Origin: Heteronotia binoei
Taxonomy: Eukaryota
NCBI RefSeq assembly: GCF_032191835.1
Contig: NC_083237.1
Coordinates: 49,910,001 to 49,974,000 of the forward strand
Direction of reading: 5' to 3'
Length of the DNA: 64,000 nt
The notes beneath the pieces were generated by a model. The model had not been told where the DNA came from. It saw only the letters and a program-made list of their open reading frames with translations, and made no database searches. Of the stretch, positions 10,186 to 63,229 are shown piece by piece. The first letter of the stretch is position 1, and each line of letters begins with the position of its first letter. A program made the translations under genes and the position numbers.

Positions 10186-11083
10186 CCTGCTCTGGCTTGG
10201 AAGGGGGCAGACATGGGAGCGGGCTGTTCCAGGCGAGAGAAAGCCTTCTCCATAGCTGGGAGGAGGAAGCCATGGACGGTGCCGTGTTTACTCCAAAGAG
10301 GACTTAGAAGCGGGCTAGCCTTAAAAGAAGTAAGTTTCTCTTGAAATGCTGTCTGCTTAAATGACTTTTAAAGGGCTAAATGGCTACAGAGTGGGAGGAG
10401 GCGGGGGGAGCGGGGTGGGGAGAGAGGAGGGTGAAGGGAAAGGCGTTGCGTCTCCAAGTTTCTTCTCTCAAGGAACTCCCTGAGATCTAAATCGCCCAGG
10501 CCCCAGGTCTACCCTAGAGTGGCCCACGAGATTTCTGCTGCTGTTGTTTTTAGATTAAAGCGTAAATTCGACAGAAGAAAGGAAATGAATCCATCGAGAT
10601 GAATGGTGATACCATTGCTGCAGAATGCTGAGGGGTTTTTTTCCCTTGCTTGGGAGGGGTGCACCTATATGTCAACCGATTCACCCTGGGCAGCTTTTGG
10701 AGGGGCGCTCTGTTCTCGGGGGTCTGTTGAAGTCGAAGAACTGGATCACATCAGAGTTCAGAGGACTGATTTGCTGGCTTGGGGGGAGGGGTTGCACGGA
10801 CTATAAGCAAAATACAGGTTTTCAAGGGCCGCTTGAGGGGTTTTTTTTCCCTTCCTGGGGGTGGTCAGTTTCCTGAATGGATTCCATCCATTCCTCTAAT
10901 CCTCCTCTTTGTATCCCGCAAGATTTAAAAAAAAAAAACATGTGGAGAAACTTGCTTCCCCCCCCCCCCCCTTATCTTCCTTTAAACTTCCATCTGACAT
11001 CACTATTCAATATATTTCTAGCTATTCACTTGTTGCTGTTTTCCACCAGCACAATCTGCCAGGTAAGAAAGTCCTCTTGGAAA

Positions 11084-11285
11084 GCAGAACAGAGCAAGAC
11101 TCCAGTGGCACTTTAAAAACTGTGTGGTAGGGTGTAAGTTTTCGTCAGGCACTGCTCACTTCTTCAGATCAGTGACTCAGGAAAGCTCCTTCCCTGTCAC
11201 AAATTTTGTTAGTCTTTCAGGTGCAACTGGATTCTTGCTCTTTCTGCGGCTACAGACAGACAAACACGGCTACCAACCTTGATCT
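11084..11285. mobile_element. Penelope-like element terminal fragments in inverted arrangement
   Basis: Left arm GAGCAAGACTCCAGTGGCAC...CTTCTTCAGATC; right arm is the reverse complement of the same repeat family seen at 57034-57345; decayed hammerhead-like core. Confidence 0.65.
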
Positions 11286-14200
11286 GTCTCCTGGAAAGCT
11301 TCATTGAAAGCCAACCACCAAAGCCATGACCTCCCGTTGTGGATTTTGCCCCTAGGATTGTCTAGTACCGTGTGCGATCCTCGTTTATGCCCCTTTATCC
11401 GGGTGTAAAAATCACCAAGCTCACTGAGACTTGCTCCCAAGAAAGCATGCACAGGCTTGTGGACCAAATAATACCTAGATCAAACAGATTGGCATTTGTT
11501 TAATGGAACAAATTCTCTTTAGAGAACCCTATGGGTTTGACGCTGGTGGCCTCAGTCAGCTTCGTGGTTGCCCCTTTGAAGAGGAATATGAGTGAGAATG
11601 GTAGATGGTCTTATGCCACACATACACACATAAGAAATGTATTTGACCTGAAACTGAGTAGCGCTCACGATAAAGGTAGTAGGCATAGTTTCAGGATGAT
11701 TCCAAGTGATTTATAGCATTTTAAGAATCTCTTAAAACATCCAAATGCAGACCTAAATTTATTTTCTTCTGCGCTTTAAGGATCTGGGTCAAAACAAACT
11801 GATTGTCAGCTAAATTAAATATAATTCAAAGCTCGCTGTTAAAATATATCTTCTGTTGAGTGCTTGGGATTTCTTTTGCTATCAAGGCANNNNNNNNNNN
11901 NNNNNNNNNNNNNNNNNNNNNNNNNNNNNNNNNNNNNNNNNNNNNNNNNNNNNNNNNNNNNNNNNNNNNNNNNNNNNNNNNNNNNNNNNNNNNNNNNNNN
12001 NNNNNNNNNNNNNNNNNNNNNNNNNNNNNNNNNNNNNNNNNNNNNNNNNNNNNNNNNNNNNNNCTTGCATTCAGAACTAAGGAAACATACAACTCTCAGA
12101 TAACACACAAAGGGATCCTCAGGCCGACACAGCGCAATCCCATGCACCCTGTCTTGAGCAAAAGTGCTAGTGAACTCGTAAATCACAATGTGTGTTCCTG
12201 TAGGTTGTTTGTTCTACTGCTTCAGCCCAGCACTGCTGCTCACCTGGGCTCGTAAGCTGAGATCCCAGTAACTGGAAAGGACTGGTAAATCACACTCTCC
12301 ACCACTCCCCCCAAGTAGACCAGACCCTCAAACGCTGATTTTCAAGGGGTCGTATTTTCACCTCCCCCATCAAAAAGGGAATCCGGCTCATTTTTTATCT
12401 TGAAATGCAGAATTCTTTCCTGAACATGCCTACCATGTTTCCCTCCAGTGAATGCTGGAGAAGGGTGTCCTAACAAAACGATCCGAGCAGAAACGGCAGA
12501 AACCAAGGCTTGTCTGTTCTCGGCCCACTGAAAAAGCAACAGAATTAGCGCTGAAAGCACCAGGCAGAGAGACGTATCTCCTGCGCCAGCTCCATTGGAA
12601 TGAATGGGGGCAGTTCAAGAGCTGTACCCATTTCCATGGTGCTTGGGCAGGGGAACTTACTACTGAATTCAAACGTGGTGAGGTGGGGGGGTGTATAGGT
12701 AGGGGGGTGGAGAGTGTCTGGCTTTAGCATCCTGCAACTTTATTCCTCCTTGATCTTCCCCCTCCCCCCTTCATTCTTCAAGGGGGGAGTTTTGGGAGAG
12801 GGTAACATTTGGGAGACACATGTCCACTGCCGAAAGTGTAAATGGAACCTTGTCTCTGCTGCTGCGATTCTCTTCGCCGCTCTCTCCCCACCCCCAACAC
12901 ACCCGTTCCTATTCCATTCAAACTCTGCAAGGAGATATGGACTGGGGTGTTAGTATCCTTCTGCTTGTGATCGGTGAATGGGGACGTGGATAGCGATGGT
13001 CCGGATGGAGGAGAGAAGGTCTCCTTTAATGCTTTATCATGAATAACTGGCCTGTGGTGGGTCCATAACCGGTGCTTTTTTGGGAAGAAGTCCTCCCCCC
13101 CCCCACAAAATAAAAAAAAAATCAAACGCCTTTATGTCCCATATCTTTCTACGGGATAATTAAGCATTTATTTATATATCTAAAAAACCCCTCTTCCATC
13201 GGTTAGTTTAAATGACCTTACAGTGCGTTCCTGAATCTTTAGTGTTTTGAAGTCGATGGATTTAAGGGGGCGGCCATTACACTATGAGACGCTCGATTCT
13301 GACTGAATGGGACCCTCAGATTAGAAGGAACTAGACAGACCAACCGCTATAAATGCAAGATCTTAGCGTGCCTCACTCCCCAACCCACACTGCAGAATAC
13401 TTTTACATTCAGATCTGTGCAAGATGAGAAGCACATCCTATTTGGTGGGTTTAGGATTTACAGATCCTGCGTCAAACATGCTTTGGCACCTGTTTATGGA
13501 ACACTGCAAAGCAGTCTGATGGAAACTCCCCCCACCTCAAGAGGCTTAATATATATGTGACATTATTTTCTGCTTATAAACAAAGGGTAACCCTTGGAGG
13601 AATTGGAAGAAATGCAGTTTTTAGGGGAAAGTTAAGACTAGATGCTCAAAGACAAAGGGTGAGAGACAGTGAGAGGCAACTCAAGGTGAAAGAGAATCCA
13701 TTCTCAGCATTGGTCTGGAAGTCTGTTAATCCAGCTATGCATCTGTCATTCATCTGTCCAGTTAGGGATCTCATTTCCCTTACCCTTACCGGCTATGAAG
13801 GCAAATAGGTGTGAAAAACCTCAACTTGTGACCCTGGAGAGCTGCTGCCAGTCTGAGTAGACAATACTGACTTTGATGGACCAAGGGTCTNNNNNNNNNN
13901 NNNNNNNNNNNNNNNNNNNNNNNNNNNNNNNNNNNNNNNNNNNNNNNNNNNNNNNNNNNNNNNNNNNNNNNNNNNNNNNNNNNNNNNNNNNNNNNNNNNN
14001 NNNNNNNNNNNNNNNNNNNNNNNNNNNNNNNNNNNNNNNNNNNCGCACTCCCCTATCATGTTCTTTGCCAGGATGATCCCTAACCGTACCTTCAATTCAA
14101 GTCCAGTTTCACAAGCCTGGGGACACCTTTGTTGAGTTGATTCCATTATCCCATTCCATTTCTCCCTGTAAGCAAGGAGGCTCTTGCTTCCAAAGGTAGC

Positions 14201-15789
14201 AAGGATATATTGCTGCTGAACAGAGAGACGATCAGTGGCACTGTTGTGGGGTGCTGCGGCTGCCCCACCTATCTAAAGACAGGGGGTAATTGAATGGTCT
14301 GCTCTGAGCTGTCCTAAATCGGTTAGCCCTTCTTATCCCAAGCCAGGCCACCGATTTTTTTTTTAGCGTCACTAAGAAATGGAAGTCAAAATAACACCCA
14401 TTTTCTGTTCAGTTGTATTCGTATTGTTCCTTTCTATAAGGCACTCTTCTTATCCTTTAAAAGGTTGTTTTCTATTTCTCCACAATTCTTTAGGAAACTT
14501 ACTGTAGGTGACCTGGTAGACATTCCTCAGTGGGGAAAAGGAAAAGACCAGAAGCACTTTTAGTTTCTTGTCTTTTCCTTCTTTTGCTTCATTCTTGCTT
14601 TCCTTAAGAAAGAAACCTCAACAGGAGAGTAAAGAGGAATGCAATTCAGAATGCATAGACAGTGAAGGCTCCTACAGAAAATTCCTTTCCCTTCTTATGA
14701 CAGACACCTGGCTGTATACAGTGTAAACAGGAAACAGAAACAATGGCCTCATATTCTCAACACTGTTCCTTGCATATAACCTTATAGGTTCCTTTATTCA
14801 GTAATGAATGCTTCAGAATTCTAATCTTCCTTTATTATGAAGGTTGCTTCGACCTCTAGCACCGCCCCCCCTTTCTTATGACATCAGAAACTGGTGAAAG
14901 AACTCCTATTTCTTGTAGACTGGGATGTGGGGGGGAGTGTGTCCTTTGAAAAACTAAAATATGACCCCTAGTCCTAAACTTAGAAAACCTATTGTTTGCA
15001 GTAAAATTGGTTGCATTCCATATATAGGATAGAATTTCTGGGCACCCTCCTTCTAGCAAAGGAATTGTAACACGCTAAATTTGCAATGGTGGCTGTGAAA
15101 TAACATAACTTGCAGTGTTAAGTAATTAAACTGTGCACCCAAACACACACGATCTCGCTGCTCCCTCCTCCTCCCGTAAGAAATGACCACAGAACCACCA
15201 AAAAGCTAAAGAGGGCCCGTGCATGCATGGTATCTTCAACTTCTCCAATTAATCTTTCCAGTCTATCCGCACAAATTGGAAGTTGGGGGTGTGTGCTGGG
15301 AAGAGCGAGGGAGGGGGGAGACAATCTGCTCCAGACCAGCCAATATACACCTCTCTTAAGTAGTACGTTTGTCAGGCGACAATAGTTGACTTTTTGACCA
15401 CAAAAGGTCATATCCAATGTTCTTTGAAGTCAATGGATAAACTCCCCTTGAACTCGGTTGTCCTCGCGATAACCAGACCAGTCTATTCATTGCTGGCGCA
15501 TGTGTGTGTATAAAACCATTGTGTGAATCGCCCCCTTTCACACACACACACACATTCGCACGCACACACATACACACAACCTTGTATCCATCTTCTTGCC
15601 ATGCATGAATATTATTTCCTTATAGACCCAGAAGCGGATCTATTGGCGAGCTGCAACCTTTGACTTAATAAATACGTGATTATTTGATGTGTGACCAGAC
15701 GGTTCTACCCTCTATCCTGACTGTGCTTAGTCTGAAACAGTAGTCATGTTTTTGTTTTAAAAGACCTCCGTGACAGGGTTTTAGGATAA

Positions 15790-15860
15790 CAGTGGCAACT
15801 TGAAGACTAACAGCATCTATTCCAGTGTGAGCTTTCATAAGCTCAGTTCTTGAGATACTA
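15790..15860 (-). mobile_element. Short decayed Penelope-like repeat fragment
   Basis: AGTGGCAACTTGAAGACTAAC...GTGAGCTTTC...TTCTTGAGATAC matches the family found at 11084, 20062 and 57034. Confidence 0.55.
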
Positions 15861-17790: not shown

Positions 17791-20061
17791 GGGGAAGCTC
17801 GGATACAACNNNNNNNNNNNNNNNNNNNNNNNNNNNNNNNNNNNNNNNNNNNNNNNNNNNNNNNNNNNNNNNNNNNNNNNNNNNNNNNNNNNNNNNNNNN
17901 NNNNNNNNNNNNNNNNNNNNNNNNNNNNNNNNNNNNNNNNNNNNNNNNNNNNNNNNNNNNNNNNNCGGGACTGTTCATCATATTTTGGACTAGACAATGG
18001 GGTGAGGGGAAGTCACCACTTCAGGGTTTTGCTTTGTTTTTGTTTTGCTAATGGCCATGCGTTTTGTCTCAAGATGAAAGGAAGCCACCAGCTTCCCAAG
18101 TGTGTTATCAACACCCTTTTCTTGAAATCAGAAGGGCTTTAGATCCAAGGAAATGCGCATAAATCGAGGTGTAAATTTCCCACTTCAACCGGTACCTATT
18201 TCTGCTTCTCTTTTCTTCTCCACCTTCCCGGCCTCCATATTTCCTCTTGTATCATATTGCCTATGCCAGTCTCTTCAGTGGGTACCTTCCTGGAGTACAT
18301 TGCTCAAAAAAAGGTGCCTAGGTGCCAGAGAGAGACAGAGTTAGGCTGGCAGAAAGAAAGATTTCCTGAGAGAGTGGAAGGATTTTCTGAGGACGGGAGA
18401 GCATGAATTTAAACAGGATTATCCCTGTGACAACTTCTCCCTGAACAAAAACAAATAAAGCAAAAGATAAATAAAGACAGAGGTTTGGTTCCTCGGGATT
18501 GAGAGCAACATATAAACTCCCAGGGACCAAACTTCTGTGATTAGAATAATCGACCAAGAGTGGCATGATCTTCTTTCAGTAGATTACCACACATATTCCC
18601 ATTTGGCATGAATATTACTGAAGGGGAAACTACCGCAGGGAACCAAAAGCATCGAAATCCAGAGGTTCTGATACATTTGGTCCGTACAAAATCTGTCCTC
18701 CNNNNNNNNNNNNNNNNNNNNNNNNNNNNNNNNNNNNNNNNNNNNNNNNNNNNNNNNNNNNNNNNNNNNNNNNNNNNNNNNNNNNNNNNNNNNNNNNNNN
18801 NNNNNNNNNNNNNNNNNNNNNNNNNNNNNNAGAATGTAGATATTTTAAAACGTGCCCAAAGAAGGTTGGATGTCTCGAAGTGACTCCTAGGCAACGCAAT
18901 CCTATGTATTTTGGCTCGGGAATTCACTTAAGACTTCCAGCTAGGGAAGAGTCACGCCCATACCTTGAAGGTAGAGATAAGTCCCACTTGAACACAGTGT
19001 AATTTTCCTCTGAGTAAACAGGGCTGCCCACCAGTTAAGACCTGAGACTTCTGAGTATTCCTTGCTGGTACAAGCTTGACTCAGTTTATTCTGGAATTTG
19101 TTGAGGTTTTCCTGGGCTCTTGGTGTGGTTTAGTTAAGAAGAGCCATTTTTATTCCTGAAGAACAAACGGAAAACTTCCGGCAAAATGAAATTTACAACA
19201 TACAATATTGGAGGTGGGGGTAAGGGAGGCTGGGAGAAACGGTAAATCTCCACGCTTGTAACAACTCAGTATAACCAGCAGAGCTCGCTTCAGACCGCAG
19301 CCAACCGGCGGTTCTTTCCCAGGCGTTCTGGCGTGGCTTTTGGTGGAGGTCCTTAGACCCCCACAAAACTTTGCCCCAGTGACCGCCTGAGAACCCGCCT
19401 TGCGGGGGAGGGGGGAAGAAACCTCCTTAGTCTAGCTCCCCAGCTCTGAAAGAAGAAAAGAGAAGGGGGAAGATGGAGGCAGTTATAGCAGTAGGGAACG
19501 CACCTAATAAAGGAGAACGAATTCTCAAGGGTTGAAAAGTTGTTCAGATCATTTAGAGAAATCATCACTGTAGACTAAACCCAAGAAAGGCAGAAAGAAA
19601 GAAAGATCCCTGCGCAGGTTCTGCAGTCTGGGGAGGTGAACGCCGTCCTGGGCGGATTGGAGAGCAAGCTATTATAGATTCAAGGGTCAAAAAGGCGAGG
19701 GTCAAAAGTTTAGGCTGTGCGAAACCCGGTCTTGCGTTTGTGCCTGACGGACTGGATGTCAGCGCTAAAGAGGACAGGAGGGAGGGCTGCTGGCGGGGGC
19801 GGCGGCGTGGCTTCGCGGTGGGGGAGGAGAGAGGGAAAAGCGCGTCGTTGTTTGCTGGCCAGAGATGAGAGAGGTAAGAGTTAGGGAAGTCCAGATGCCA
19901 TTCGCAACCTTGCAAAGGGCGGCAGACCTACTGGGAAGGGGCGGTGTGGGGAGAGGAGGTAGAATTAGGGGAGAGAGGACGCGCGGGTGTGGAGTAGTGC
20001 CATTCAGGAGTAGTGGGTAGTGGGCAGAGTAGACCTTGTATCTCTCTCTCTCTCTCTCTCT

Positions 20062-20390
20062 CTTATTACATATAGATCCAAATAGGCAACCGTGTTGGTC
20101 TGAAGTAGTAGAACAAAATAGGAGTCAATTGCACCTTTAAGACCAACGTAGTTTTATTCAGAACGTAAGCTTTCGTGTGCATGCACACTTCTTCAGACGA
20201 GGAATGAGGTAACAGTAAGCAGAGTACAGAAAGCATAGCTGGTGGGGTTTGGAATGCCAAGTGGTACAAAGTTAAAGTCCAATAGCAGAATAGTAAAATT
20301 AACAAACTGAGGAAACCTTTGATCTGGGTTGCGTTAGCGTGGGAAACCATAAAACAGTAACATGTCAGAATGTGGGAATGCCTGTTAAAT
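20062..20390 (-). mobile_element. Penelope-like element terminal repeat copy (right boundary uncertain)
   Basis: ATAGATCC...GGCAACCGTGTTGGTCTGAAG...GCACCTTTAAGACCAAC...GCTTTCGTGTGCATGCACACTTCTTCAGA; homologous to copies at 57034, 58810 and 59785; abuts a (TC)n run at 20040-20062. The Penelope assignment is inferred from the hammerhead motif and inverted-pair architecture; no RT or GIY-YIG ORF is present. Confidence 0.65.
20164..20199 (-). ncRNA. Minimal type-I hammerhead ribozyme motif (predicted to act as a dimer)
   Basis: Minus strand reads CGU-CUGAAGA-A-GUGUGCAUGCACAC-GAAA-GCU-U/ACG: complete catalytic core, paired stem II, palindromic AGCU stem III, CUU cleavage triplet, 3-bp stem I. Confidence 0.7.
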
Positions 20391-23300
20391 ATTCTATTGC
20401 TAATAAACCTGGGTTACATATATAAAAGAATCCAGCGATGTCGTCAACTGTCTACCCAATACTTAGATAAAACGAACAAGAGGCGAGCAGCAGGTCATTA
20501 ATTCAGTATCAGGAGACGATATATTACTATTATTACGATTGCTATTATTATTACTACTGCTGCTGCTACAGGAATGTTACTATATATTCCTAATCCAGAA
20601 TAATAACATTTCCACTGATATAATGTAATTGATCCTAAATTGGTGGTGTGTGCCTTTCAGGAGGATATATACTTCTTAAGAAATTCAGTCAGTGTAACGA
20701 TACTTATAAAAAGATTTAGATGACGAAACTACGAGCTGTCAATTGTATCATCATCCTGTACGCCATGCTGCTACTACTATGGCTGCTGTTGCTAGTAGTA
20801 GCAGTAGCAGTTGTGTTGGCTTCATGAAAATAGTGGTAAATAATATATCCCTTCAAAATTCATAACATGCTTCTAAAATGAACAGATATTTTTCTGAGCA
20901 AGGCCGACTGTAACCAAATTAACTATCCTAAACTGGCCCGTGTGTCCTTTTCACTTCAAAAGTCTGCACCGAATTAATCCACCCATTAATATACAAGTAG
21001 ATATGCCACCAGGAACGGCTCATGAAACGTTTCAGTGGACTGTTTCCTAAACCTTTAATGACAGGTGAACATTTTCTCCCTCAGGACTTGCAGCTGCGCA
21101 GTCAACCTCCTACCTGTGCCTAATGTTTTGTTTTTTTAAAAAAATAATTAAATATTAATAATGGCTTTGCCTTCGGAATTTGTATCCAGACTTCCCAAAG
21201 GGACTTTCCTTTTAGGGGACAAATGACTGTGGTGGCTTGGCTTCCAGAAATCACAGGAGAAACCTGCTGTGTACTGAAAGAAATATTGGTCGGTTTTATA
21301 AGCCTGGATCTTCTGCAGTACCTATGGTTCTTGAGCTCATTTACTTTTCAACCCGTTTTGGATTTAGTGTAATGTGTTACTGCAAACAGAGAGTTTCCTG
21401 TATCTCTCAATGAGATGAATGAAATGTTTGAAATATGACCTTTTAATGTTAGCTTTTGTTTGTTTTGGATCCGGCAATCCTTCTAGATGCTTGGAATGGT
21501 CCCTTTCGAGAGATTTTGAAATGTAGTTTTATTTGAATGTAGACTTATCAATATATTACTCAGTTACATCATAGAACAACTGAATATTTGATTGGCTGAG
21601 AGACCAGTTTTAAATTTGCTTGTTATGTGTGCGTGTGTGTGTCCTACATTAGTTGGCAATAAGTAACCCACTATTTAGCCCCTTTGCCGTTTATATCTCC
21701 TGGGTGTATGTAGGAAAAAACTCTCTCTGATTAGACATTGCTGCAGAATATGGAGGAGGGGGAATGAACTAAATCGGATTAAAGTCAAATAATGTCTTGA
21801 TTACAAATGAAGACACTGGTTTCTTGTAGGACTGGAGCAGCTAGAAAGGGGTGGGGAGAGACACTTTGAATCCATGTACCTGTTTTGTTATTTTTAAATC
21901 AGACACAAAACCAAAGAACCCCTATTCCCTTCTACCCTAGCCATTTCTCTGTATTGAGCTGTAACATATCAACTACATGAAAATAACTATTCCCCGTGCA
22001 AAGAATGACCCTCACACAAATAGCCATGTTTGTTTGTTTGTTTAAAAAAACATAGACGTTCAGCTTGCAGGATGAAAGTAAGTCCCATTTTAACGACCTT
22101 TCGAAGAAAAGGTTCTTAGGATCAAGGGTAGTCAAGGAAGCTCCCTTATAAATGGATCACTTAGGAGAAAGCGAAGCCAATAATATAAATAATTCAGAGC
22201 CAGGACCGAAAGGTTGCCTTCTCACCCCAATCCTTTGGGCAGAAGGCATGTAATTGAATTTGGGATGTAATTGAATTTGGGAATTTGTTTTTGGATGCTC
22301 CTCATATTGGTCCCACTCCGAATTAAAAGATGTGGGAGGGGGAGGTGTGTCCCATCCTTAAAGATACCAAATAGTTCTATCAATCGGATCCCCTAAACGT
22401 CGAGGTGAATCCTACTTATTTAAATCGTTTCCGGATCCGCATTATATTTGTCGCACCATGAGTTGTTGACGTGCAAGAAAATATTCCTAGAGGTTCAGGC
22501 GTGTGTGTAGAAATTGATAAAGGTTGGCTCTAACGAATTGCAGAGGCTCCGCTTGGTATTTATGAAATATCACGATAAATGGGCTACCGTTTAGCCGTAA
22601 CTTGGACCATCCATCTCTGGGCTCCTTTAATTACTTCACTTATCTCTGAAGCGCAGTCCCCACCACTCCAGGTTCGCACAATGCTGAGGCAGGGCGTTTA
22701 AATGGGATAACATTTGTTTTCGGAAGGTGAACGTCGTTCAGGTGAGATTCCGTGGCGCTTTAGTTGGTGCTGCTAGGAACTGACCTCGAATATCTTAACT
22801 TTCTTAAGTTCTAATTTTTGAGCATGGTTCCTCCCCCTATAGGAAGTGCCATTAGACCAGACAGAAAACCCGGGCGAAAACGGATGGGTTTCCTCTGTGA
22901 GTGGGCAACGTGTGAATCTTGTCTCTCGCGAAAAGGGAAAGAGAGAACGAGGCAGACACTCGCAGCTATAGTTGAATGCCAATTGGCCTCTCGGAGAGAC
23001 TATATGTTCTCTACCTGTGAAGGTGTGGCATCGTGTTTCGTCTACGTGTACCTGTAGAATTGGTGGCAAATTCATGACATACAAGTCCAGAGATATTCCT
23101 CACCCTCCTGGGAAGCTCAGTTCAGCATTCAGTTTAGATTCTAGCATCTAGCGACGCCTGGTGCGTTGAATAACACCTCTAAGGTAACATGTTTCCTTTC
23201 AACAAAGTTACCTCTTTGCTAGATGGGGGGGGGGCAATAAGATACGAACTCCCTCAATTAAACCTTCAGCTGAATTGTTCCTTNNNNNNNNNNNNNNNNN

Positions 23301-23799
23301 NNNNNNNNNNNNNNNNNNNNNNNNNNNNNNNNNNNNNNNNNNNNNNNNNNNNNNNNNNNNNNNNNNNNNNNNNNNNNNNNNNNNNNNNNNNNNNNNNNNN
23401 NNNNNNNNNNNNNNNNNNNNNNNNNNNCGATGCTACACAGACAGAATCCTTCTCTCTCACACACACACTCCCCTTATTCCTCTTAATCTACGGCGTCTAC
23501 ATTTAAGCAGTGAATTCAGAAGTAGGTTTACTTCCGATGCCAGAGGACCGACAGAGAAGTAATAATACATACCTACCACCCAACGCGGACGCAGGAGAGA
23601 AACGTATAAAGGGAATGACTTAAAAAAAATCGTAGGCGTTTGCAAGCGACAGAGGAAAAGATCTGCATTAAAATTCCTCGTCGTGGCATCCTCTTCCCCC
23701 CCCCCCCACCCCAAAGTAATGACCTGGGTAAAATTCAATATGACCGAGGGAACTATGCAAGCGTATTATAGAAAACGCGAGGGGGAGAGTCCCGGAGAG

Positions 23800-27151: not shown

Positions 27152-27245
27152 TGTGTCTGTCTTCTATATGTACCCTGTAGATCCGAATTTGTGTAAAAGA
27201 AGCGGCCTCACAAATTCGCATCTAGGGGAATATGTAGTTGACACA
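27152..27245 (+). ncRNA. MIR10A: mir-10a precursor
   Basis: Mature 5p TACCCTGTAGATCCGAATTTGTG at 27171-27193, star arm CAAATTCGCATCTAGGGGAATA at 27211-27232, hairpin closed by TGTGTC/GACACA; canonical position upstream of HOXB4. Confidence 0.98.
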
Positions 27246-31259: not shown

Positions 31260-31585
31260 TCAACCCCAACTACACGGGGAGGGAGCCGAAACGGTCCCGG
31301 ACGGCCTACACCCGGCAGCAGCTCCTAGAACTGGAGAAGGAATTCCACTACAACCGCTACCTCACCCGGAGGCGACGGGTGGAAATCGCCCACTCCCTTT
31401 GCCTGTCCGAGCGCCAGATCAAGATCTGGTTTCAGAACCGGAGGATGAAATGGAAAAAAGACCACAAATTGCCCAATACCAAGATCCGGTCGAATGCTGC
31501 GGCCAGTCTCCCGGCTCAAGGAGGGAGCGGAGCCCCCCAGGACCGAACCAATGGACCAACCCCCAACCCCCCCGCCAGTCTATAA
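31260..31585 (+). CDS. HOXB4: HOXB4 exon 2 (homeodomain)
   Basis: Long pyrimidine tract + AG at 31258-31259; [78 protein letters not shown]...*. Confidence 0.96.
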
Positions 31586-56254: not shown

Positions 56255-57033
56255 CATAGATGCATCCCATCCAATCACCCCCTGCGCCCCTGGAGTTAAA
56301 CCTCTACAGAAGGAGCTGGCTTTGCCCAGATGGGTGAGGAGAAGAGGGAACGAGGAGAAAGGAACAGTGGGACTTCCTCCTCCCCTCCCCCCGCCCTTTC
56401 AGCTCGTGTTGTTGTTTATGTTTAATACTTTGGAGGCAATTCAAAACTACTTCCGTAGATTGACCATTAATCCGGTGAGTTATTAGGCTTCTTAACCGAA
56501 GGTCGTTTGGGAGAAAGAGTTACAATCCATCAAGGGAAGGGAGCTGGTGGAGACACTGCTGCTGTCCCGAGCTGGATGGAGTTTATGCACAAGTATGTGG
56601 CTGTGCAAAGGGAAGTGGGTTTTCTCAGTCGTTTGAGGACAACTCCCCCCCCCCCTCCACATGTATTTGCATATGCTTCCTCTAGGATCCAGGCCTCTTT
56701 TCTTGCTTAGTCTCTCCCAAATCCCTTCTTTGCAAATGGCCTGTCCATACCAATCCTTTGACGCCCAGCACAGCCTTTGGGGATGTGGTTAAAATGGACC
56801 CTCCCCCTTCTTTTATTCAGGAGGAAACCTGGCTGGCTGGGTCCACCCTAGGTCTCCATTGGACTGAGTCCCAAGCCTGTCTAGGATCGATACTGTAAAC
56901 AGAACTGAAACTGGAAATACAGTAACTTGGGTGCAAACCAACAGGACTCCCCCCTCCCCTCTATTTTTAAAACGGAAGTGCAGTTAACACCACTGCTAAG
57001 AAATTGGGGAGATCTTAGACTGTGATCTTAAAG

Positions 57034-57345
57034 ATAGATCCAGATGGGTAGCCGTGTTAGTCTGTCTGTAGCTGCAGAAAAAAGCAAGAGTCCAGTGGCA
57101 CCTGAAAGACTAACAGGGGTGGAATTCTAGCAGGAGCTCCTTTGCATATTAGGCCACATACCCCTGATGTAGCCAATCCTCCAATAGCTTACAAGGCTTT
57201 TTTTGGTAAGCTCTTGGAGGATTGGCTACACCAGAGGGATGTGGCCTAATATGCAAAGGAGCTCCTGCTAGAATTCCACCCCTGAAGACTAACAAAGTTC
57301 GCGGAAGGGTGTGAGCTTTCGTGAGTCATTGCTCACTTCTTCAGC
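57034..57345 (-). mobile_element. Penelope-like repeat copy interrupted by a MITE; intact hammerhead core lacking stem I
   Basis: ATAGATCCAGATGGGTAGCCGTGTTAGTCTG...GAGTCCAGTGGCACC; minus strand 57344-57309 reads CTGAAGA-A-GTGAG-CAATGA-CTCAC-GAAA-GCT-C-ACAC. Confidence 0.7.
57114..57284. mobile_element. Palindromic hAT-type MITE inserted into the Penelope-like repeat
   Basis: About 80-bp near-perfect arms CAGGGGTGGAATTCTAGCAGGAGCTCC...; perfect 8-bp TSD AAGACTAA (57106-57113, 57285-57292). Confidence 0.94.
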
Positions 57346-57439
57346 TCGGAAGTCACCACTATTCTAAACCATATGCATAGTGCAGGGGAATGAGTTCAGG
57401 GCGTCACCTTTGAAGTTAAAAGCAAAACCTTCAGGATTA

Positions 57440-57620
57440 CAGTAGAAAAGAGCAAGAATCCAGTAGCACCTTAAAAACTAACAAAATTTGTGGCAGGGTA
57501 GGATCCAGCTAGTCAGCTTCTTCAGATCTGAAGAAGTGAGCAATTTCTCGCCAAAGCTCTGAAGAAGTGAGCAGTGACTCAGGAAAGCTAATGTTACTGG
57601 GTTCTTGCTCTTTTCTACTG
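57440..57620. mobile_element. Inverted pair of Penelope-like repeat ends
   Basis: Arms AGTAGAAAAGAGCAAGAATCCAGTA / TACTGGGTTCTTGCTCTTTTCTACT; central 20-bp palindrome CTTCTTCAGATCTGAAGAAG (57517-57536). Confidence 0.7.
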
Positions 57621-57766
57621 TAATTTTGAAGGTTTTGCTTTTCAATTTAAAGATGATGCCATTGATTGAACTCATTTCCGTGCATGTGGCTTAAAACAGA
57701 GGTGACTTCCAATGTTCACTCCCAATCCTTCCAAGCCAAAAAATGTATATAGAAAGTAAATAGGAC

Positions 57767-58456: not shown

Positions 58457-58809
58457 TTATTGACTGATGGTAGGTAAAGATCCGCTTCCTAAATCTCATT
58501 GAAATTAACCGGAACTTTACTCGAAGAACACCACCATCGATCGATTTTGTTACTGGTGCTACTAATGGTTCATTTTCTTGTTTTTCTGGATCCTTCACAA
58601 AGGTGTTTTCCACTTTTCGGGAAGCTGTGAGTCCTCTGGACTTGTTCTTCTCTCATCTCCATGACTTCCTGCTCTTGGGACTTTGGATTTCTGGAATTTT
58701 GGCCGCTGAAAAGTCGGTGTGGAGATGGAGCTACTGAGCTCAGGAACTTCCGGCTTCCTAGCTTTGCCTCCTCGCAGTCCTTTATCCATACTGCCCATGA
58801 TATCATCCA

Positions 58810-58950
58810 TAGTGGAAGCAGCAGGCCAAAGTTTGAGTCTAGCGGCATCTTTAAGACCAACAAAGTTTTATTCTGGATGTAAATTCTGGTGTGCATGCAC
58901 ACTTCTTCTGAAGTAGATCTTAGAGGCTTCACTGGACTCAAACTTTGTTC
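58810..58950. mobile_element. Penelope-like repeat copy with short inverted arm
   Basis: AAAGTTTGAGTCTAGCGGCATCTTTAAGACCAACAAAG...GTGTGCATGCACACTTCTTC, then CACTGGACTCAAACTTTGTTC (reverse complement of the left arm). Confidence 0.65.
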
Positions 58951-59784: not shown

Positions 59785-59970
59785 GAAACAATTCTAAGAA
59801 CAAGGTTAGAGTCCAGTGGCACCTTTAAGTCCAACGAAGTTTCATTCAAGGTCTGAGCATTTGTGTGCGCGCACCCTTCTTCAGAGACATACTTTGCGGG
59901 TCTTCGCTGGTTTTAAAGGTGCCGCTGGACTCTAACTTTTGTTCTGTCGCTTCAGGCCAGCAGGGCTGCC
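59785..59970. mobile_element. Inverted pair of Penelope-like repeat ends
   Basis: AGAACAAGGTTAGAGTCCAGTGGCACCTTTAA and its reverse complement TTAAAGGTGCCGCTGGACTCTAACTTTTGTTCT; decayed hammerhead at 59851-59888 on the minus strand. Confidence 0.7.
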
Positions 59971-60908
59971 CACCTAGCTGCAATAAAAAGTAGTAATGCA
60001 CAGCGCCCTTCGAGGCTTTCAGAAACCACCCCTTTCTCTTCGCTTGAGATCTGAAAGCGGCGAAAGCTTGGGCCACAACGACAAGACGGATTTCGTCTGC
60101 GGCATTCCCGTCACTGCTTGGAAGCGCTTTCCAAACAAACACCTCCGGAAACGGCTTTATTTACTAGCGAACGGAATGATGTCTCTCCGAAGCGGTTACC
60201 AGATGAGGTTCTGCTGCTAAGTGGAGCGGTGCCAACTCGGTGGCGGTTCAAATGGGCGGGCGCATCTCGCACCCCCTGGCTGGAGGACGCTCCAAGGAGT
60301 GCCCCAGAGGCCGCAAAACCAAGAAAAGGTTGTCCGGATCTCCCCGAACCTGATTTATGGTCTCCGGGATCCCGAGACTGGCAGCGAGGCCCTGCGTGGG
60401 AGAGTGAGTGTGTGGATAGCGGACTTTTAAAAATTACGGTTACAGATAAATAATATTGCCCTTCAAAACGGAAAGCCGGGTTATCAGGGCCGTGGAATGT
60501 TTCCCCCAACGAAAATATTCTCTTTCTTCCACCTCCCAACCAAACCTCATCAAAGCGTCGGCCGCCATAAATCTCGGCATACTTCCCTTTCACACATTCC
60601 GGGTGAATTCTTGGGTTCAATCGCTTTATCCCGACCCAGTTCCCATTTGCATGTGCTTAGGAAGGCCCTATTCCATAGGGACCTGCTTCTAGTACACCTC
60701 GCGGGGGGGGGGGACCCGATCCGAGATCCTGAGCACGTTTTCACAGCTGGACTCCCTGATTTCGTTTGGGTCGGGTTTTCTGCCCTCCCTGTCCCTCAGT
60801 CTCTGGGGAAACTCGTAAAACTTCTTCGTTTGGTTTTCCCCGTGAAAAGAAACTCGGCAGATTAACGAAGACCGGGATCAAGACGACTCCAGTATTAATA
60901 CGTCCCTT

Positions 60909-61053: not shown

Positions 61054-62793
61054 TAAAACTCCAAGACGCCTTCTCATTCCCCACCCCCGAGTATTCCCAC
61101 ACCTCCTTCGAAGTGCTCAAGCATCTAAGTAAGGAATGGGCGCCTAACCATGGTTAGGTTATTATTCCTCTTTTAATTGGAATACGGGCGTACGTTAGCC
61201 AAAAATGGAAATAAATCAACCTCCCACCCCCACCCACCCAAAAAAACCCCCCACCACCCCACCCCAAATATTTCCTGAGAACTGAGAGAAGTCTAGCAGT
61301 TTGCTAACATTTCCGTGCCGCCCCTCAAGGCACGCCTCTAGCAGTCCAGCCAGGGTGGAAGGCAGTTCGAAGGCAGTGGCTCATAAATACACGTTTGCGT
61401 CAAGTCGTCTGTTGCCATGTATCATCTTTACTGTCAGTGGGCCCTCGAAATAAATATGTTAACGTTAGTCGGCCACTTTGGAGGGGAGCGAGGGAGACTC
61501 GGGGCCGCTGGAAACTTGCCAGCTTGGAATGGTGGGAGGGGGTGGAGGAGAGAATCTTCCTGTAGGTCGGCTTGGAGGGTGATCCTGGGGTTGATTTTGG
61601 CTCCTTCCGAGAAGTTTCTCTTATGGTTTTCAAGTGCCGAACTTTTGCCTTATCACCCAACTTCTGTTTCCCTTCCCGCCTTTTTTAATATGTCTCAAAT
61701 CCAGGTCCTTTGCTTTCTCAGACTGTACTCCTCCCTTATATCGCCCGGATCAGCCGTCTGAGAACTGGTGAGTTCAGACAATATTCACGACCTCTTTGGG
61801 ATTGCCTCCAATTACTCCCCTCCCCCTTTGCATAGGTAAAAAACAAAAACTCTTAAGGATTTATTTGGTGACTCTCTGACCAGTTCGGCATTTCCTTTCA
61901 TTTGGAGGGGGTGTCTCGGGGTTTGTATTGTCTTGCAGTTTCTGTGCCTCCGACTTGTAAAAAGACCTGAAAATCCACTATATAGAGAGCAATAAAGAGA
62001 TCTTCAAGACTATACAAAAGTATCTTATATAAACATATAAACTGTTCTCGAACCTCAACAACTCTCTGAAAAAACCAATTACACTACAGCGTTTGTCTAT
62101 GAAAGTTTACCATCGCCAGTGGTTCTAAAATTAGCCCTGGAGAAACTGAAGTCCAAACACTGATTTCCGCACCGGTGGTTTTTGCGACTGAAGTTCTTCT
62201 GGGCCTTCAGGTTACCTTTCGCTCTGGGGTCCAAATCTCAGGAAGTCCTTCCAAAACAGAAAAGCGCTGCTCAAAGATCCCAGTTTTCCTCTGGAAACTT
62301 TCTTAAGAGCAAAAGTGGCCGTGAAAACAAGGCGGCGTCCAGGTGAAGTCAATTGTTGCTATGAACTGCGGAGCTGGCTCCAGTGAAAGGAACTTCCAGA
62401 AGTTTCCACCGGTTCGCAAGCCTTTCCAAAGATGGGAGAGAGCAAAAGATGGTCTTCTAGGATATCACAAGGCCACCTAAGAGAGAAATGAGACATCTCC
62501 AGAGTTTCTTCCCTCCTTGGTAAATGACTGTTCCCCTCGATTCAACAGCTAAGACTAGACCCTTCCCCCCAAAAAAAGGGAAAGCACAATGCTCTCTTTC
62601 ATGCACACGCACCCAAAAATGTGCAGACACCTCAACTTCTTCCTCCCACTCGCAGTTTGCTGCGGTAGATCTTTTGGCGTCAGCAGCGGCAGCTGGGGAA
62701 GGCTTTTGGCTCCCAAGCCCAAGTGGTATGCGAATAGGGACGGGGGTCATAAATCTTGAGTGACTTGAAGAGACGTCATCTCTATCTATCTAT

Positions 62794-62869
62794 ATCCATC
62801 CATCCATCCATCCATCCATCCATCCATCCATCCATCCATCCATCCATCCATCCATCCATCCATCCATCC
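62794..62869. repeat. (ATCC)19 microsatellite
   Basis: Direct read. Confidence 0.97.
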
Positions 62870-63229
62870 AAGGATAAACAACTTCCCATTTACTTTGTGT
62901 TTGATAATTTTTACATAATACCAATAATTTGAATACAATTCTCTCCCTCCCTCCCTCTCTCTCTCCACCCCCACCCCCCATTGCCAGCATATCCAGAACA
63001 AGCTAGCTGGGTTCAACAGACGCATCCTAAAACTTTGATTCCTTCTTTGCAATTTCGCCATATTTTTAAAACTGTATTTTCTTATTATCACCACTTTTTT
63101 TAAAAAAAAGTTACTTCCCTGGGTGGCCCCCTTCCCCCCAAAAAACATCCTCCAAACATGCCTTTCACGATGATGTCATATTTGGGGTGCCGCCAGAGCA
63201 GCCTGGGACTTGGGTGGGCCTTGGGAGAA

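What the first reader, a model, noticed from the sequence alone, without database searches (positions are those of the whole stretch)
20164..20199. Complete minimal hammerhead-ribozyme motif inside the HOXB5-HOXB4 interval
Seen: the minus strand reads CGU CUGAAGA A GUGUGCAUGCACAC GAAA GCU U/ACG. All core nucleotides (C3-A9, G12-A14, A15.1, U16.1, H17) are present, stem II is a perfect palindrome, stem III is the loop-less palindrome AGCU, and stem I is CGU/ACG. Established: Penelope-like elements carry minimal type-I hammerheads whose palindromic stem III allows cleavage as dimers, and an extra A between A9 and G10.1 is tolerated in the CChMVd(+) viroid hammerhead. Inference: this is a potentially active self-cleaving RNA between two RAREs, oriented so that it would cut antisense transcripts crossing the interval. 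It keeps all three CpGs, including the C11.1-G12 CpG lost in the copies at 15826, 58810 and 59851, so it is either young or preserved.
Basis: partly seen in the sequence, partly recalled or inferred. Interest (0 to 1): 0.8.

Follow-up and report, generated by a model that had tools for sequence, protein, structure and literature searches.

The report
Retroelement-borne minimal hammerhead copy, HOXB interval
The hammerhead-ribozyme motif is really there, but it is one solitary copy of a very abundant Penelope-type retroelement repeat whose minimal hammerheads are already described, and nothing suggests that this copy cuts RNA or serves the HOX cluster.

Summary
The 36-nt motif reads exactly as described on the minus strand (20199->20164). 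It lies in the HOXB5-HOXB4 intergenic region, antisense to the HOX genes and about 7 kb upstream of mir-10.

It is not a lone motif. It opens a ~134-nt repeat unit (20197->~20066) that ends at a (GA)n microsatellite. At least ten copies or fragments lie in this window, several as head-to-head fold-backs. Thousands of contigs from three other organisms match the unit.

Every unusual feature fits the published minimal hammerhead of Penelope-like elements (Cervera & De la Pena 2014): the extra A after A9, the G10.1-C11.1 pair, the AGCU "helix III", and a short helix I.

Such motifs need a second copy to form helix III, and single copies did not cleave in vitro. This copy has no partner within 37 kb. 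The predicted trans-dimer is very weak (about -3.9 kcal/mol), and a non-productive dimer through the stem II palindrome is far more stable.

CpGs are kept across the whole element, inside a CpG-preserving zone, not just in the ribozyme core.

Verdict: an ordinary, probably inert transposon copy. The scan has already logged about 50 hammerhead/Penelope notes elsewhere in this genome.

The parts
20164..20199 (-). Minimal type-I hammerhead motif. Helix I 5' strand CGU (20199-20197); C3-A9 CUGAAGA (20196-20190); bulged A (20189); helix II GUGUG-CAUG-CACAC (20188-20175); G12 A13 A14 (20174-20172); A15.1 G15.2 C16.2 U16.1 = AGCU (20171-20168); U17 (20167); helix I 3' strand ACG (20166-20164).
   Evidence: Read directly. 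The monomer fold reproduces helices I and II but no helix III.
20066..20197 (-). Repeat unit shared with the family: hammerhead, then a variable linker, then the conserved tail (..GTTGGTCTTAAAGGTGC..CTTCAGACCAACACGG..GGATCT).
   Evidence: BLAST within the window and the alignment of 10 copies. Thousands of contigs from other organisms lie only on about 20048-20209, with loose ends at 20197/20198.
20041..20063 (.). (TC)n/(GA)n microsatellite abutting the 3' end of the element; the likely insertion target.
   Evidence: Microsatellite insertion bias of Penelope-like elements is described in PMC8557442.
57313..57344 (-). Second copy with both core boxes, the bulged A, a 5-bp helix II (GUGAG/CUCAC), AGCU and C17, but no helix I. 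It is part of a fold-back with the copy at 57559-57590.
57559..57590 (+). Inverted partner copy. The core boxes are present, but C11.1 is changed to G.
58800..58912 (-). Decayed copy of the same subfamily as the finding (same GTGTGCATGCACAC stem II). The core is broken: CAGAAGA and CAGAAUUU.
59790..59888 (-). Decayed copy with G12 changed to A. Its helix I is GUCU/AGAC. It lies head-to-head with the fragment at 59902-59975 (+).
11083..11285 (.). Head-to-head pair of copies, 11184->11083 (-) and 11178->11285 (+), joined inside the hammerhead region.
15770..15852 (-). Old decayed copy (CUCAAGA core, C11.1 changed to U).
57028..57114 (-). Tail-only fragment of the family. The separate 79-nt, 95% complementary fold-back at 57114-57284 lies directly beside it.

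Best explanation
The motif is the hammerhead carried at the 5' edge of the conserved terminal module of a Penelope-like retroelement, either its pseudo-LTR/3' end or a short non-autonomous derivative. That module inserted, minus-strand oriented, at a (GA)n microsatellite in the HOXB5-HOXB4 intergenic region of a reptile-type genome.

In the parent elements the hammerhead is thought to process multimeric or tandem element RNA. There, two copies pair through the palindromic AGCU to build the missing helix III. This step is inferred in the literature, not shown.

The copy here is solitary, so it cannot build helix III. It is most likely catalytically silent and has no role in the HOX cluster. Its intact look comes from modest age or slow CpG decay in a CpG-preserving HOX domain, not from selection on the ribozyme.
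For: 1. Sequence and family.
- The homology shared with other in-window copies starts at TCTGAAGAAG and runs about 134 nt to the microsatellite.
- At least 10 copies or fragments lie in the window.
- Head-to-head fold-backs occur at 11091-11241, 57114-57284, 57313-57589, 57400-57660 and 59802-59939.

2. Abundance.
- 2478, 3850 and 2505 contigs from DNA runs of three organisms, and 1213 from an RNA library, lie on about 20048-20209. Almost nothing lies on the flanks.
- The scan holds 50 'hammerhead Penelope' notes elsewhere in this genome (these are unchecked).

3. Match to the published minimal hammerhead of Penelope-like elements.
- An unpaired nucleotide between A9 and G10.1, the G10.1-C11.1 pair, palindromic 15.2-16.2, a long helix II and a short helix I.
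- Dual motifs on opposite strands 100-700 bp apart, and presence in reptiles.
- Penelope-like insertions are 5'-truncated, often carry an inverted copy, and prefer microsatellites.

4. Family-level structure.
- Helix II is 88.6% paired across copies, with a U-A/A-U swap between subfamilies.
- In other genomes the core varies by less than 10% apart from G12. G12 shows 23-46% G->A, as expected from CpG decay.

5. Inactivity.
- The fold shows no helix III.
- The AGCU dimer is worth about -3.9 kcal/mol, against -35.4 kcal/mol for a dimer through the 14-nt palindrome.
- No second intact motif lies nearer than 57313.
- Published single motifs did not cleave.

6. CpGs.
- Five CpGs are spread over the whole unit (o/e 0.95), with local o/e 0.54-0.81. 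Around the decayed copies at 57-58 kb, o/e is 0.1-0.3.
- Paralogous contigs are 93-97% identical to this copy across hammerhead, tail and upstream alike (records 10, 11, 15).
Against: - No reverse transcriptase or GIY-YIG ORF is present in the window. The link to Penelope-like elements therefore rests on structural hallmarks and the literature, not on a physically attached ORF.
- Rfam's hammerhead models do not score the motif even at E<=10. This is expected for a motif without a helix III hairpin, but it is still a negative.
- The monomer does adopt helices I and II with pair probabilities above 0.9 in a 66-nt context, so a host factor or a trans partner from one of the many paralogous transcripts cannot be excluded.
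- Neither transcription of the minus strand nor orthologous conservation could be tested.
Confidence: 0.85

Rival explanations
1. The unit is a dispersed monomer of a non-LTR retrozyme, a non-autonomous, hammerhead-bearing relative of Penelope-like pseudo-LTRs that spreads through small circular RNAs. It would then not be a 5'-truncated tail of an autonomous element. The practical consequence for this locus is the same: a solitary, inert monomer.
For: - Unit length of about 134 nt, with the hammerhead at one edge.
- Reptile retrozyme consensus sequences average 176 bp, and dispersed monomers are common and tied to Penelope-like pseudo-LTRs.
- No ORF in the window.
- Family contigs are present in an RNA library.
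Against: - No tandem arrangement here. The upstream 230 nt shows no significant similarity to the unit, and no second hammerhead is nearby.
- The in-window copies form head-to-head fold-backs, a hallmark of Penelope-like insertions, not head-to-tail arrays.
- Copies have defined ends rather than circular permutations.
Confidence: 0.1
2. The copy is a working, possibly exapted, self-cleaving ribozyme that cuts antisense transcripts crossing the HOXB5-HOXB4 interval. Trans-pairing with other family transcripts or host chaperones would help it form the active fold.
For: - All core positions are intact.
- Helices I and II are predicted with probability above 0.9.
- Family RNAs appear in an RNA library, so partners might exist.
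- It is the only copy in the window that has both core boxes and a helix I.
Against: - No helix III is possible in cis, and the predicted trans helix III has a Kd of about 2 mM.
- A competing palindrome dimer is far more stable.
- Published single minimal hammerheads were inactive, and dimers were weak even at high Mg2+.
- The fold is no more stable than shuffled sequence (z = +0.86).
- The conserved block shared with three other organisms ends at about 19963, before the insertion.
- The non-ribozyme tail is preserved just as well as the core.
- There is no evidence that the minus strand is transcribed.
Confidence: 0.03
3. The repeat is some other family, such as a SINE or LINE tail, and the hammerhead resemblance is fortuitous. 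The motif would then mean nothing even at the family level.
For: - No Rfam hammerhead hit.
- No Penelope-like ORF in the window.
- Helix I is poorly conserved among the in-window copies, 53.6% paired.
Against: - Four independent non-trivial features match the published descriptor: the bulged nucleotide, G10.1-C11.1, the palindromic 15.2-16.2, and compensatory change in helix II.
- The core is the least variable part of the family in other genomes.
- There is no tRNA or other pol III head anywhere in the window.
- Fold-backs and microsatellite targets fit Penelope-like elements.
Confidence: 0.02

Closest known systems
Minimal hammerheads (min-HHR) in the pseudo-LTRs of Penelope-like elements (Cervera & De la Pena 2014, PMC4209133)
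   Same: CUGANGA and GAAA boxes; one unpaired nucleotide between A9 and G10.1; the G10.1-C11.1 pair; helix III reduced to the palindrome A-G-C-U; a short, variable helix I; thousands of heterogeneous copies per genome; pairs on opposite strands; reported in reptiles.
   Different: - Helix II here is 5 bp plus a tetraloop, or a 14-nt palindrome, rather than the 6-8 bp reported.
- Helix I is only 3 bp, plus a possible 4-bp extension.
- No flanking RT/GIY-YIG ORF in this window.
- This particular lizard-type family was not found quoted in the searchable literature.
Animal non-LTR retrozymes (PMC7229834; bioRxiv 10.64898/2026.07.22.740005)
   Same: Short non-coding units (about 176 bp on average in reptiles) carrying a type-I hammerhead; related to Penelope-like pseudo-LTRs; dispersed monomers occur.
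   Different: Retrozymes are defined by tandem head-to-tail units, and their hammerheads have a small helix III hairpin. Here the unit is solitary, or in fold-backs elsewhere in the window, and has no helix III loop.
CChMVd (+) viroid hammerhead with an extra A after A9 (De la Pena & Flores 2001, as cited in PMC4209133)
   Same: An extra nucleotide between A9 and G10.1 is compatible with catalysis.
   Different: The viroid ribozyme has full helices and loop-loop contacts, and it is active. In the retroelement family the extra nucleotide is a family trait, not a peculiarity of this copy.
Double hammerheads of newt satellite 2 and ASBVd (Forster et al. 1988, as cited in PMC4209133)
   Same: An unstable helix III, so activity requires two copies pairing through a palindromic helix III.
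   Different: Those RNAs are made as tandem multimers, which supply the second copy in cis. This locus has a single copy.
Rfam Hammerhead_1 and the conserved intronic vertebrate hammerheads HH9/HH10 (from my own knowledge)
   Same: The same catalytic core and type-I topology.
   Different: Those are single-copy, orthologously conserved and monomer-active, and they score with the Rfam models. This motif gives no Rfam hit and belongs to a multicopy transposon family.

Membership tests
Penelope-like-element minimal hammerhead (min-HHR) | Conserved core boxes C3-A9 (CUGANGA) and G12-A14/A15.1 (GAAA), with H17 at the cleavage site. | tested here: met
   CUGAAGA at 20196-20190, GAAA at 20174-20171, U17 at 20167.
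Penelope-like-element minimal hammerhead (min-HHR) | [quoted passage not shown] | tested here: met
   A at 20189. The same A is present in all in-window copies that keep the region. The feature is listed in PMC4209133.
Penelope-like-element minimal hammerhead (min-HHR) | A G10.1-C11.1 pair closing an extended helix II (6-8 bp reported). | tested here: met
   G20188-C20175. Helix II is 5 bp plus a CAUG loop as a monomer, slightly shorter than reported. It is 88.6% paired across 7 copies, with an AU/UA swap.
Penelope-like-element minimal hammerhead (min-HHR) | Helix III reduced to a palindrome at 15.1-16.1, so that only a dimer forms it. | tested here: met
   AGCU at 20171-20168. No helix III in the monomer fold. 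The dimer helix is worth about -3.9 kcal/mol.
Penelope-like-element minimal hammerhead (min-HHR) | A short helix I (4-5 bp) that covaries within consensus families. | tested here: inconclusive
   There are 3 bp (CGU/ACG) plus a possible AUUC/GAAU extension. Only 53.6% of cells pair across the 7 in-window copies. The 5' strand lies beyond the point (20197/20198) where most family contigs diverge.
Penelope-like-element minimal hammerhead (min-HHR) | Location in the pseudo-LTR or terminal region of an element encoding RT plus a GIY-YIG endonuclease. | tested here: inconclusive
   No Pfam domain in 8 long ORFs of the window, so all local copies are ORF-less fragments. The indirect hallmarks are present: fold-backs and a microsatellite target. 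A real test needs the whole genome.
Penelope-like-element minimal hammerhead (min-HHR) | Massive multicopy occurrence with sequence heterogeneity. | tested here: met
   At least 10 copies in 64 kb. Between 2478 and 3850 matching contigs per run in three other organisms.
Penelope-like-element minimal hammerhead (min-HHR) | Self-cleavage, at least as a dimer. | not testable with these tools
   This needs in vitro transcription. Published relatives showed no cleavage as single motifs and low cleavage as dimers.
Rfam hammerhead families (Hammerhead_1, HH9, HH10 and others) | A covariance-model score at or above the gathering threshold. | tested here: not met
   No hammerhead family at gathering on the whole window, nor at E<=10 on 20000-20400.
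Non-LTR retrozyme | Head-to-tail tandem units, each with a hammerhead. | tested here: not met
   The upstream 230 nt is not similar to the unit (score 11 against a shuffle mean of 11.3). No second core within 37 kb.
Exapted, orthologously conserved vertebrate ribozyme | Presence at the orthologous site in other species, with a selectively preserved core. | tested here: inconclusive
   Contigs from three organisms match the neighbouring block 19583-19963 at about 95%. None bridges into the insertion, and the 20210-21000 flank is not matched. Low-coverage contigs cannot prove absence.

The most novel reading that the evidence does not exclude
This solitary transposon-derived minimal hammerhead has been co-opted. 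With help from paralogous family transcripts or host chaperones, it would cleave antisense RNAs running through the HOXB5-HOXB4/mir-10 interval, adding a ribozyme-based layer to HOX antisense RNA processing in squamates.
Probability: 0.03. Interest if true: 0.7.

Novelty: new member of a known kind. Interest (0 to 1): 0.15.

Why it matters
As it stands, it matters little. It is one more copy of a transposon-borne minimal hammerhead of a kind described in 2014, sitting in a lizard-type HOX cluster, and such clusters are already known to tolerate transposons (PMC6791295).

It is useful as a calibration point for the scan. A 'complete' hammerhead core in these genomes is a repeat-family signature, not a sign of a locus-specific ribozyme.

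It would only become interesting if minus-strand transcripts were shown to be cut here, or if the insertion proved to be conserved at this site across squamates.

Tried and rejected
- Rfam search: no hammerhead hit. I judged this uninformative, because the models expect a helix III hairpin.
- Partial tandem with a decayed upstream unit at about 20372-20215: this was a visual impression only. A local alignment scores no better than shuffles, so I dropped it.
- Public-run look-ups: no run holds more than 8% of the words of the locus, and no RNA run from the source organism is available. Expression, strand and cleavage ends could not be examined.
- Laid contigs: these gave family abundance and variation, but no contig bridged from unique flank into the insertion. 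Orthologous presence or absence stays open.
- Pfam on 8 long ORFs: nothing, so no Penelope-like ORF is in the window.
- Full-text search for the exact repeat sequence and the supplements of the 2014 paper: nothing held.
- Search for consensus DR1/DR2/DR5 retinoic-acid response elements: none in unmasked sequence, so 'between two RAREs' is unverified.
- The scan's own index by sequence, and by words that include the endonuclease name: blank.

Full report
**Observation.**
- All hammerhead core positions are present.
- Stem II is a perfect 14-nt palindrome.
- Positions 15.1-16.1 form the palindrome AGCU.
- U17 is followed by ACG, which can pair with the CGU that precedes C3.
- A relaxed pattern for this architecture occurs 3 times in the window against 0.12 expected from shuffles, so the motif is not a chance assembly.

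**Genomic setting.** All the landmarks below are on the + strand.

| Feature | Position |
|---|---|
| HOXB6 homeobox | about 2190-2330 |
| HOXB5 hexapeptide | 6204 |
| HOXB5 homeobox, to the stop | 7716 to about 7900 |
| mir-10 | 27164-27238 |
| HOXB4 hexapeptide | 29229 |
| HOXB4 homeobox | about 31328-31460 |

- An earlier scan note places HOXB7 just before the window.
- The motif therefore lies in the HOXB5-HOXB4 intergenic region, antisense to the HOX genes.
- I found no consensus retinoic-acid response elements in the unmasked sequence, so that detail is unverified.

**What it belongs to.**
- BLAST of the surrounding 300 nt against the window shows that similarity to other places begins at TCTGAAGAAG (20197). 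It runs about 134 nt to a (GA)n microsatellite at 20041-20063.
- Ten copies or fragments align. The unit consists of the hammerhead, a variable linker, and a conserved tail.
- Two subfamilies differ in stem II: GUGUG..CACAC versus GUGAG..CUCAC. This is a compensatory U-A/A-U swap. Across seven copies helix II is 88.6% paired and helix I only 53.6%.
- Several copies sit head-to-head as fold-backs: 11091-11241, 57114-57284, 57313-57589, 57400-57660 and 59802-59939. The copy in question has no inverted partner.
- No tRNA-like head or other RNA family is present apart from mir-10.
- Eight long ORFs have no Pfam domain, so all local copies are ORF-less.

**Abundance elsewhere.**
- No public run holds the locus itself; the highest share of its words is 0.08.
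- Laying contigs from three DNA runs (three organisms) and one RNA library on 19400-21000 gave 2478, 3850, 2505 and 1213 contigs.
- In the DNA runs these lie almost only on about 20048-20209. The immediate flanks 19994-20047 and 20210-21000 have essentially zero depth.
- About 130-160 contigs per DNA run run off as loose ends at 20197/20198, with only 0.41-0.45 agreement. Most family members therefore stop resembling this copy at position 2.1 of the hammerhead.
- Some RNA-library contigs continue to 20224-20292 at 87-94% identity. A subfamily shares the upstream part too.
- Within the laid family, no position of C3-A9, the bulged A, stem II or A13-U16.1 varies by 10% or more.
- The positions that do vary:

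| Hammerhead position | Window position | Change and share of depth |
|---|---|---|
| G12 | 20174 | A in 23-46% (CpG decay) |
| U17 | 20167 | C in 1-31% |
| 1.2 | 20165 | U in 6-32% |
| 1.3 | 20164 | A in 58-76% |

- These figures are biased, because only contigs at least 85% like this copy were laid.
- The scan itself holds 50 notes with 'hammerhead Penelope' elsewhere in this genome (unchecked).

**Comparison with the literature.**
- Cervera & De la Pena 2014 define minimal hammerheads in the pseudo-LTRs of Penelope-like elements by exactly these traits:
  - the core boxes;
  - a conserved extra nucleotide between 9 and 10.1;
  - the G10.1-C11.1 pair;
  - palindromic 15.2-16.2 with little or no helix III;
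  - a long helix II and a short, ill-defined helix I.
- They also report thousands of heterogeneous copies per genome, pairs on opposite strands 100-700 bp apart, and occurrence in reptiles.
- Craig et al. 2021 describe Penelope-like insertions as strongly 5'-truncated, often with an adjacent inverted copy, biased toward microsatellites, and with the hammerhead near the 3' end. All of this matches the copies in this window.
- Li et al. 2026 tie reptile non-LTR retrozymes (mean 176 bp) to the same pseudo-LTRs. That leaves a minor ambiguity between a truncated tail and a non-autonomous monomer.
- Transposons in squamate HOX clusters are well documented.

**Can this copy cleave?**
- In a 66-76-nt context the minimum-free-energy fold does form helix I (CGU/ACG plus AUUC/GAAU) and helix II. 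Pair probabilities exceed 0.9. The fold is no more stable than shuffled sequence (-9.3 kcal/mol, z = +0.86), and it has no helix III.
- Helix III can only come from AGCU/AGCU pairing with a second copy. I estimate this at about -3.9 kcal/mol net, or a Kd of about 2 mM.
- A dimer through the 14-nt stem II palindrome reaches -35.4 kcal/mol and does not create helix III either.
- Only one other place in the window has both core boxes with a helix II (57313-57344). It is 37 kb away and lacks helix I.
- The upstream 230 nt is not a decayed tandem unit.
- Published single minimal hammerheads showed no detectable cleavage. Dimers and trimers cleaved weakly, mostly at non-physiological Mg2+.
- I therefore expect this copy to be silent.

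**Young or preserved?**
- The three hammerhead CpGs are not exceptional.
- The unit has five CpGs spread over its whole length (o/e 0.95).
- It lies beside a CpG-rich block. CpG o/e is 0.81 at 19501-20000 and 0.54-0.72 at 20001-20750. By contrast it is 0.10-0.32 around the decayed copies at 57-58 kb.
- That block (19583-19963) is about 95% conserved in three other organisms, but the conservation ends before the insertion.
- Paralogous contigs are 93-97% identical to this copy across tail, hammerhead and upstream sequence alike.
- Uniform preservation points to modest age, or to slow CpG decay in a probably hypomethylated HOX domain. It does not point to selection on the ribozyme.
- Two of the three helix I pairs use bases (20198-20199) outside the segment shared with most family members. 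They are either subfamily-specific or fortuitous.

**Verdict.** The origin in a Penelope-like element is supported. The suggestion of a locus-specific active ribozyme is not supported. This is a new copy of a known kind of transposon-borne minimal hammerhead, of low interest unless cleavage or orthologous conservation is shown.

Noticed in passing
window 27164-27238 (+): A full-length mir-10 precursor (Rfam RF00104, 73.1 bits) lies about 2 kb upstream of the HOXB4 hexapeptide exon. This is the expected mir-10a position.
   Followed up: no
window 19583-19963: A CpG-rich block (CpG o/e about 0.8) is matched at about 95% identity by single contigs from three other organisms, while the sequence on either side is not matched. 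It is a candidate conserved CpG island or regulatory element about 100 bp from the insertion.
   Followed up: partly
window 20210-20425: Contigs from one metatranscriptomic RNA library, but not from the three DNA runs, pile up on the stretch just upstream of the hammerhead (summed depth 415-3972). This stretch is itself repeated in that organism. It may be a longer subfamily of the same element or a second repeat.
   Followed up: partly
window 57114-57284: A 79-nt-arm inverted repeat, 95% complementary with a 13-nt spacer, lies next to the hammerhead fold-back at 57313-57589. It looks like a young fold-back insertion in a cluster of family fragments between 57.0 and 60.0 kb.
   Followed up: partly
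window 11890-12063, 13891-14043, 17810-17965, 18702-18830, 23284-23427 (N runs): The masked stretches in the HOXB5-HOXB4 interval are not coding exons; the HOXB5 and HOXB4 exons are readable elsewhere. They are presumably masked conserved non-coding elements and were left untouched.
   Followed up: no
window about 62786-63148 (-): An ORF reads a (WMDG)n run after a spurious 'YPWM'. This is a GGATGGAT-type microsatellite, not a HOX hexapeptide.
   Followed up: no
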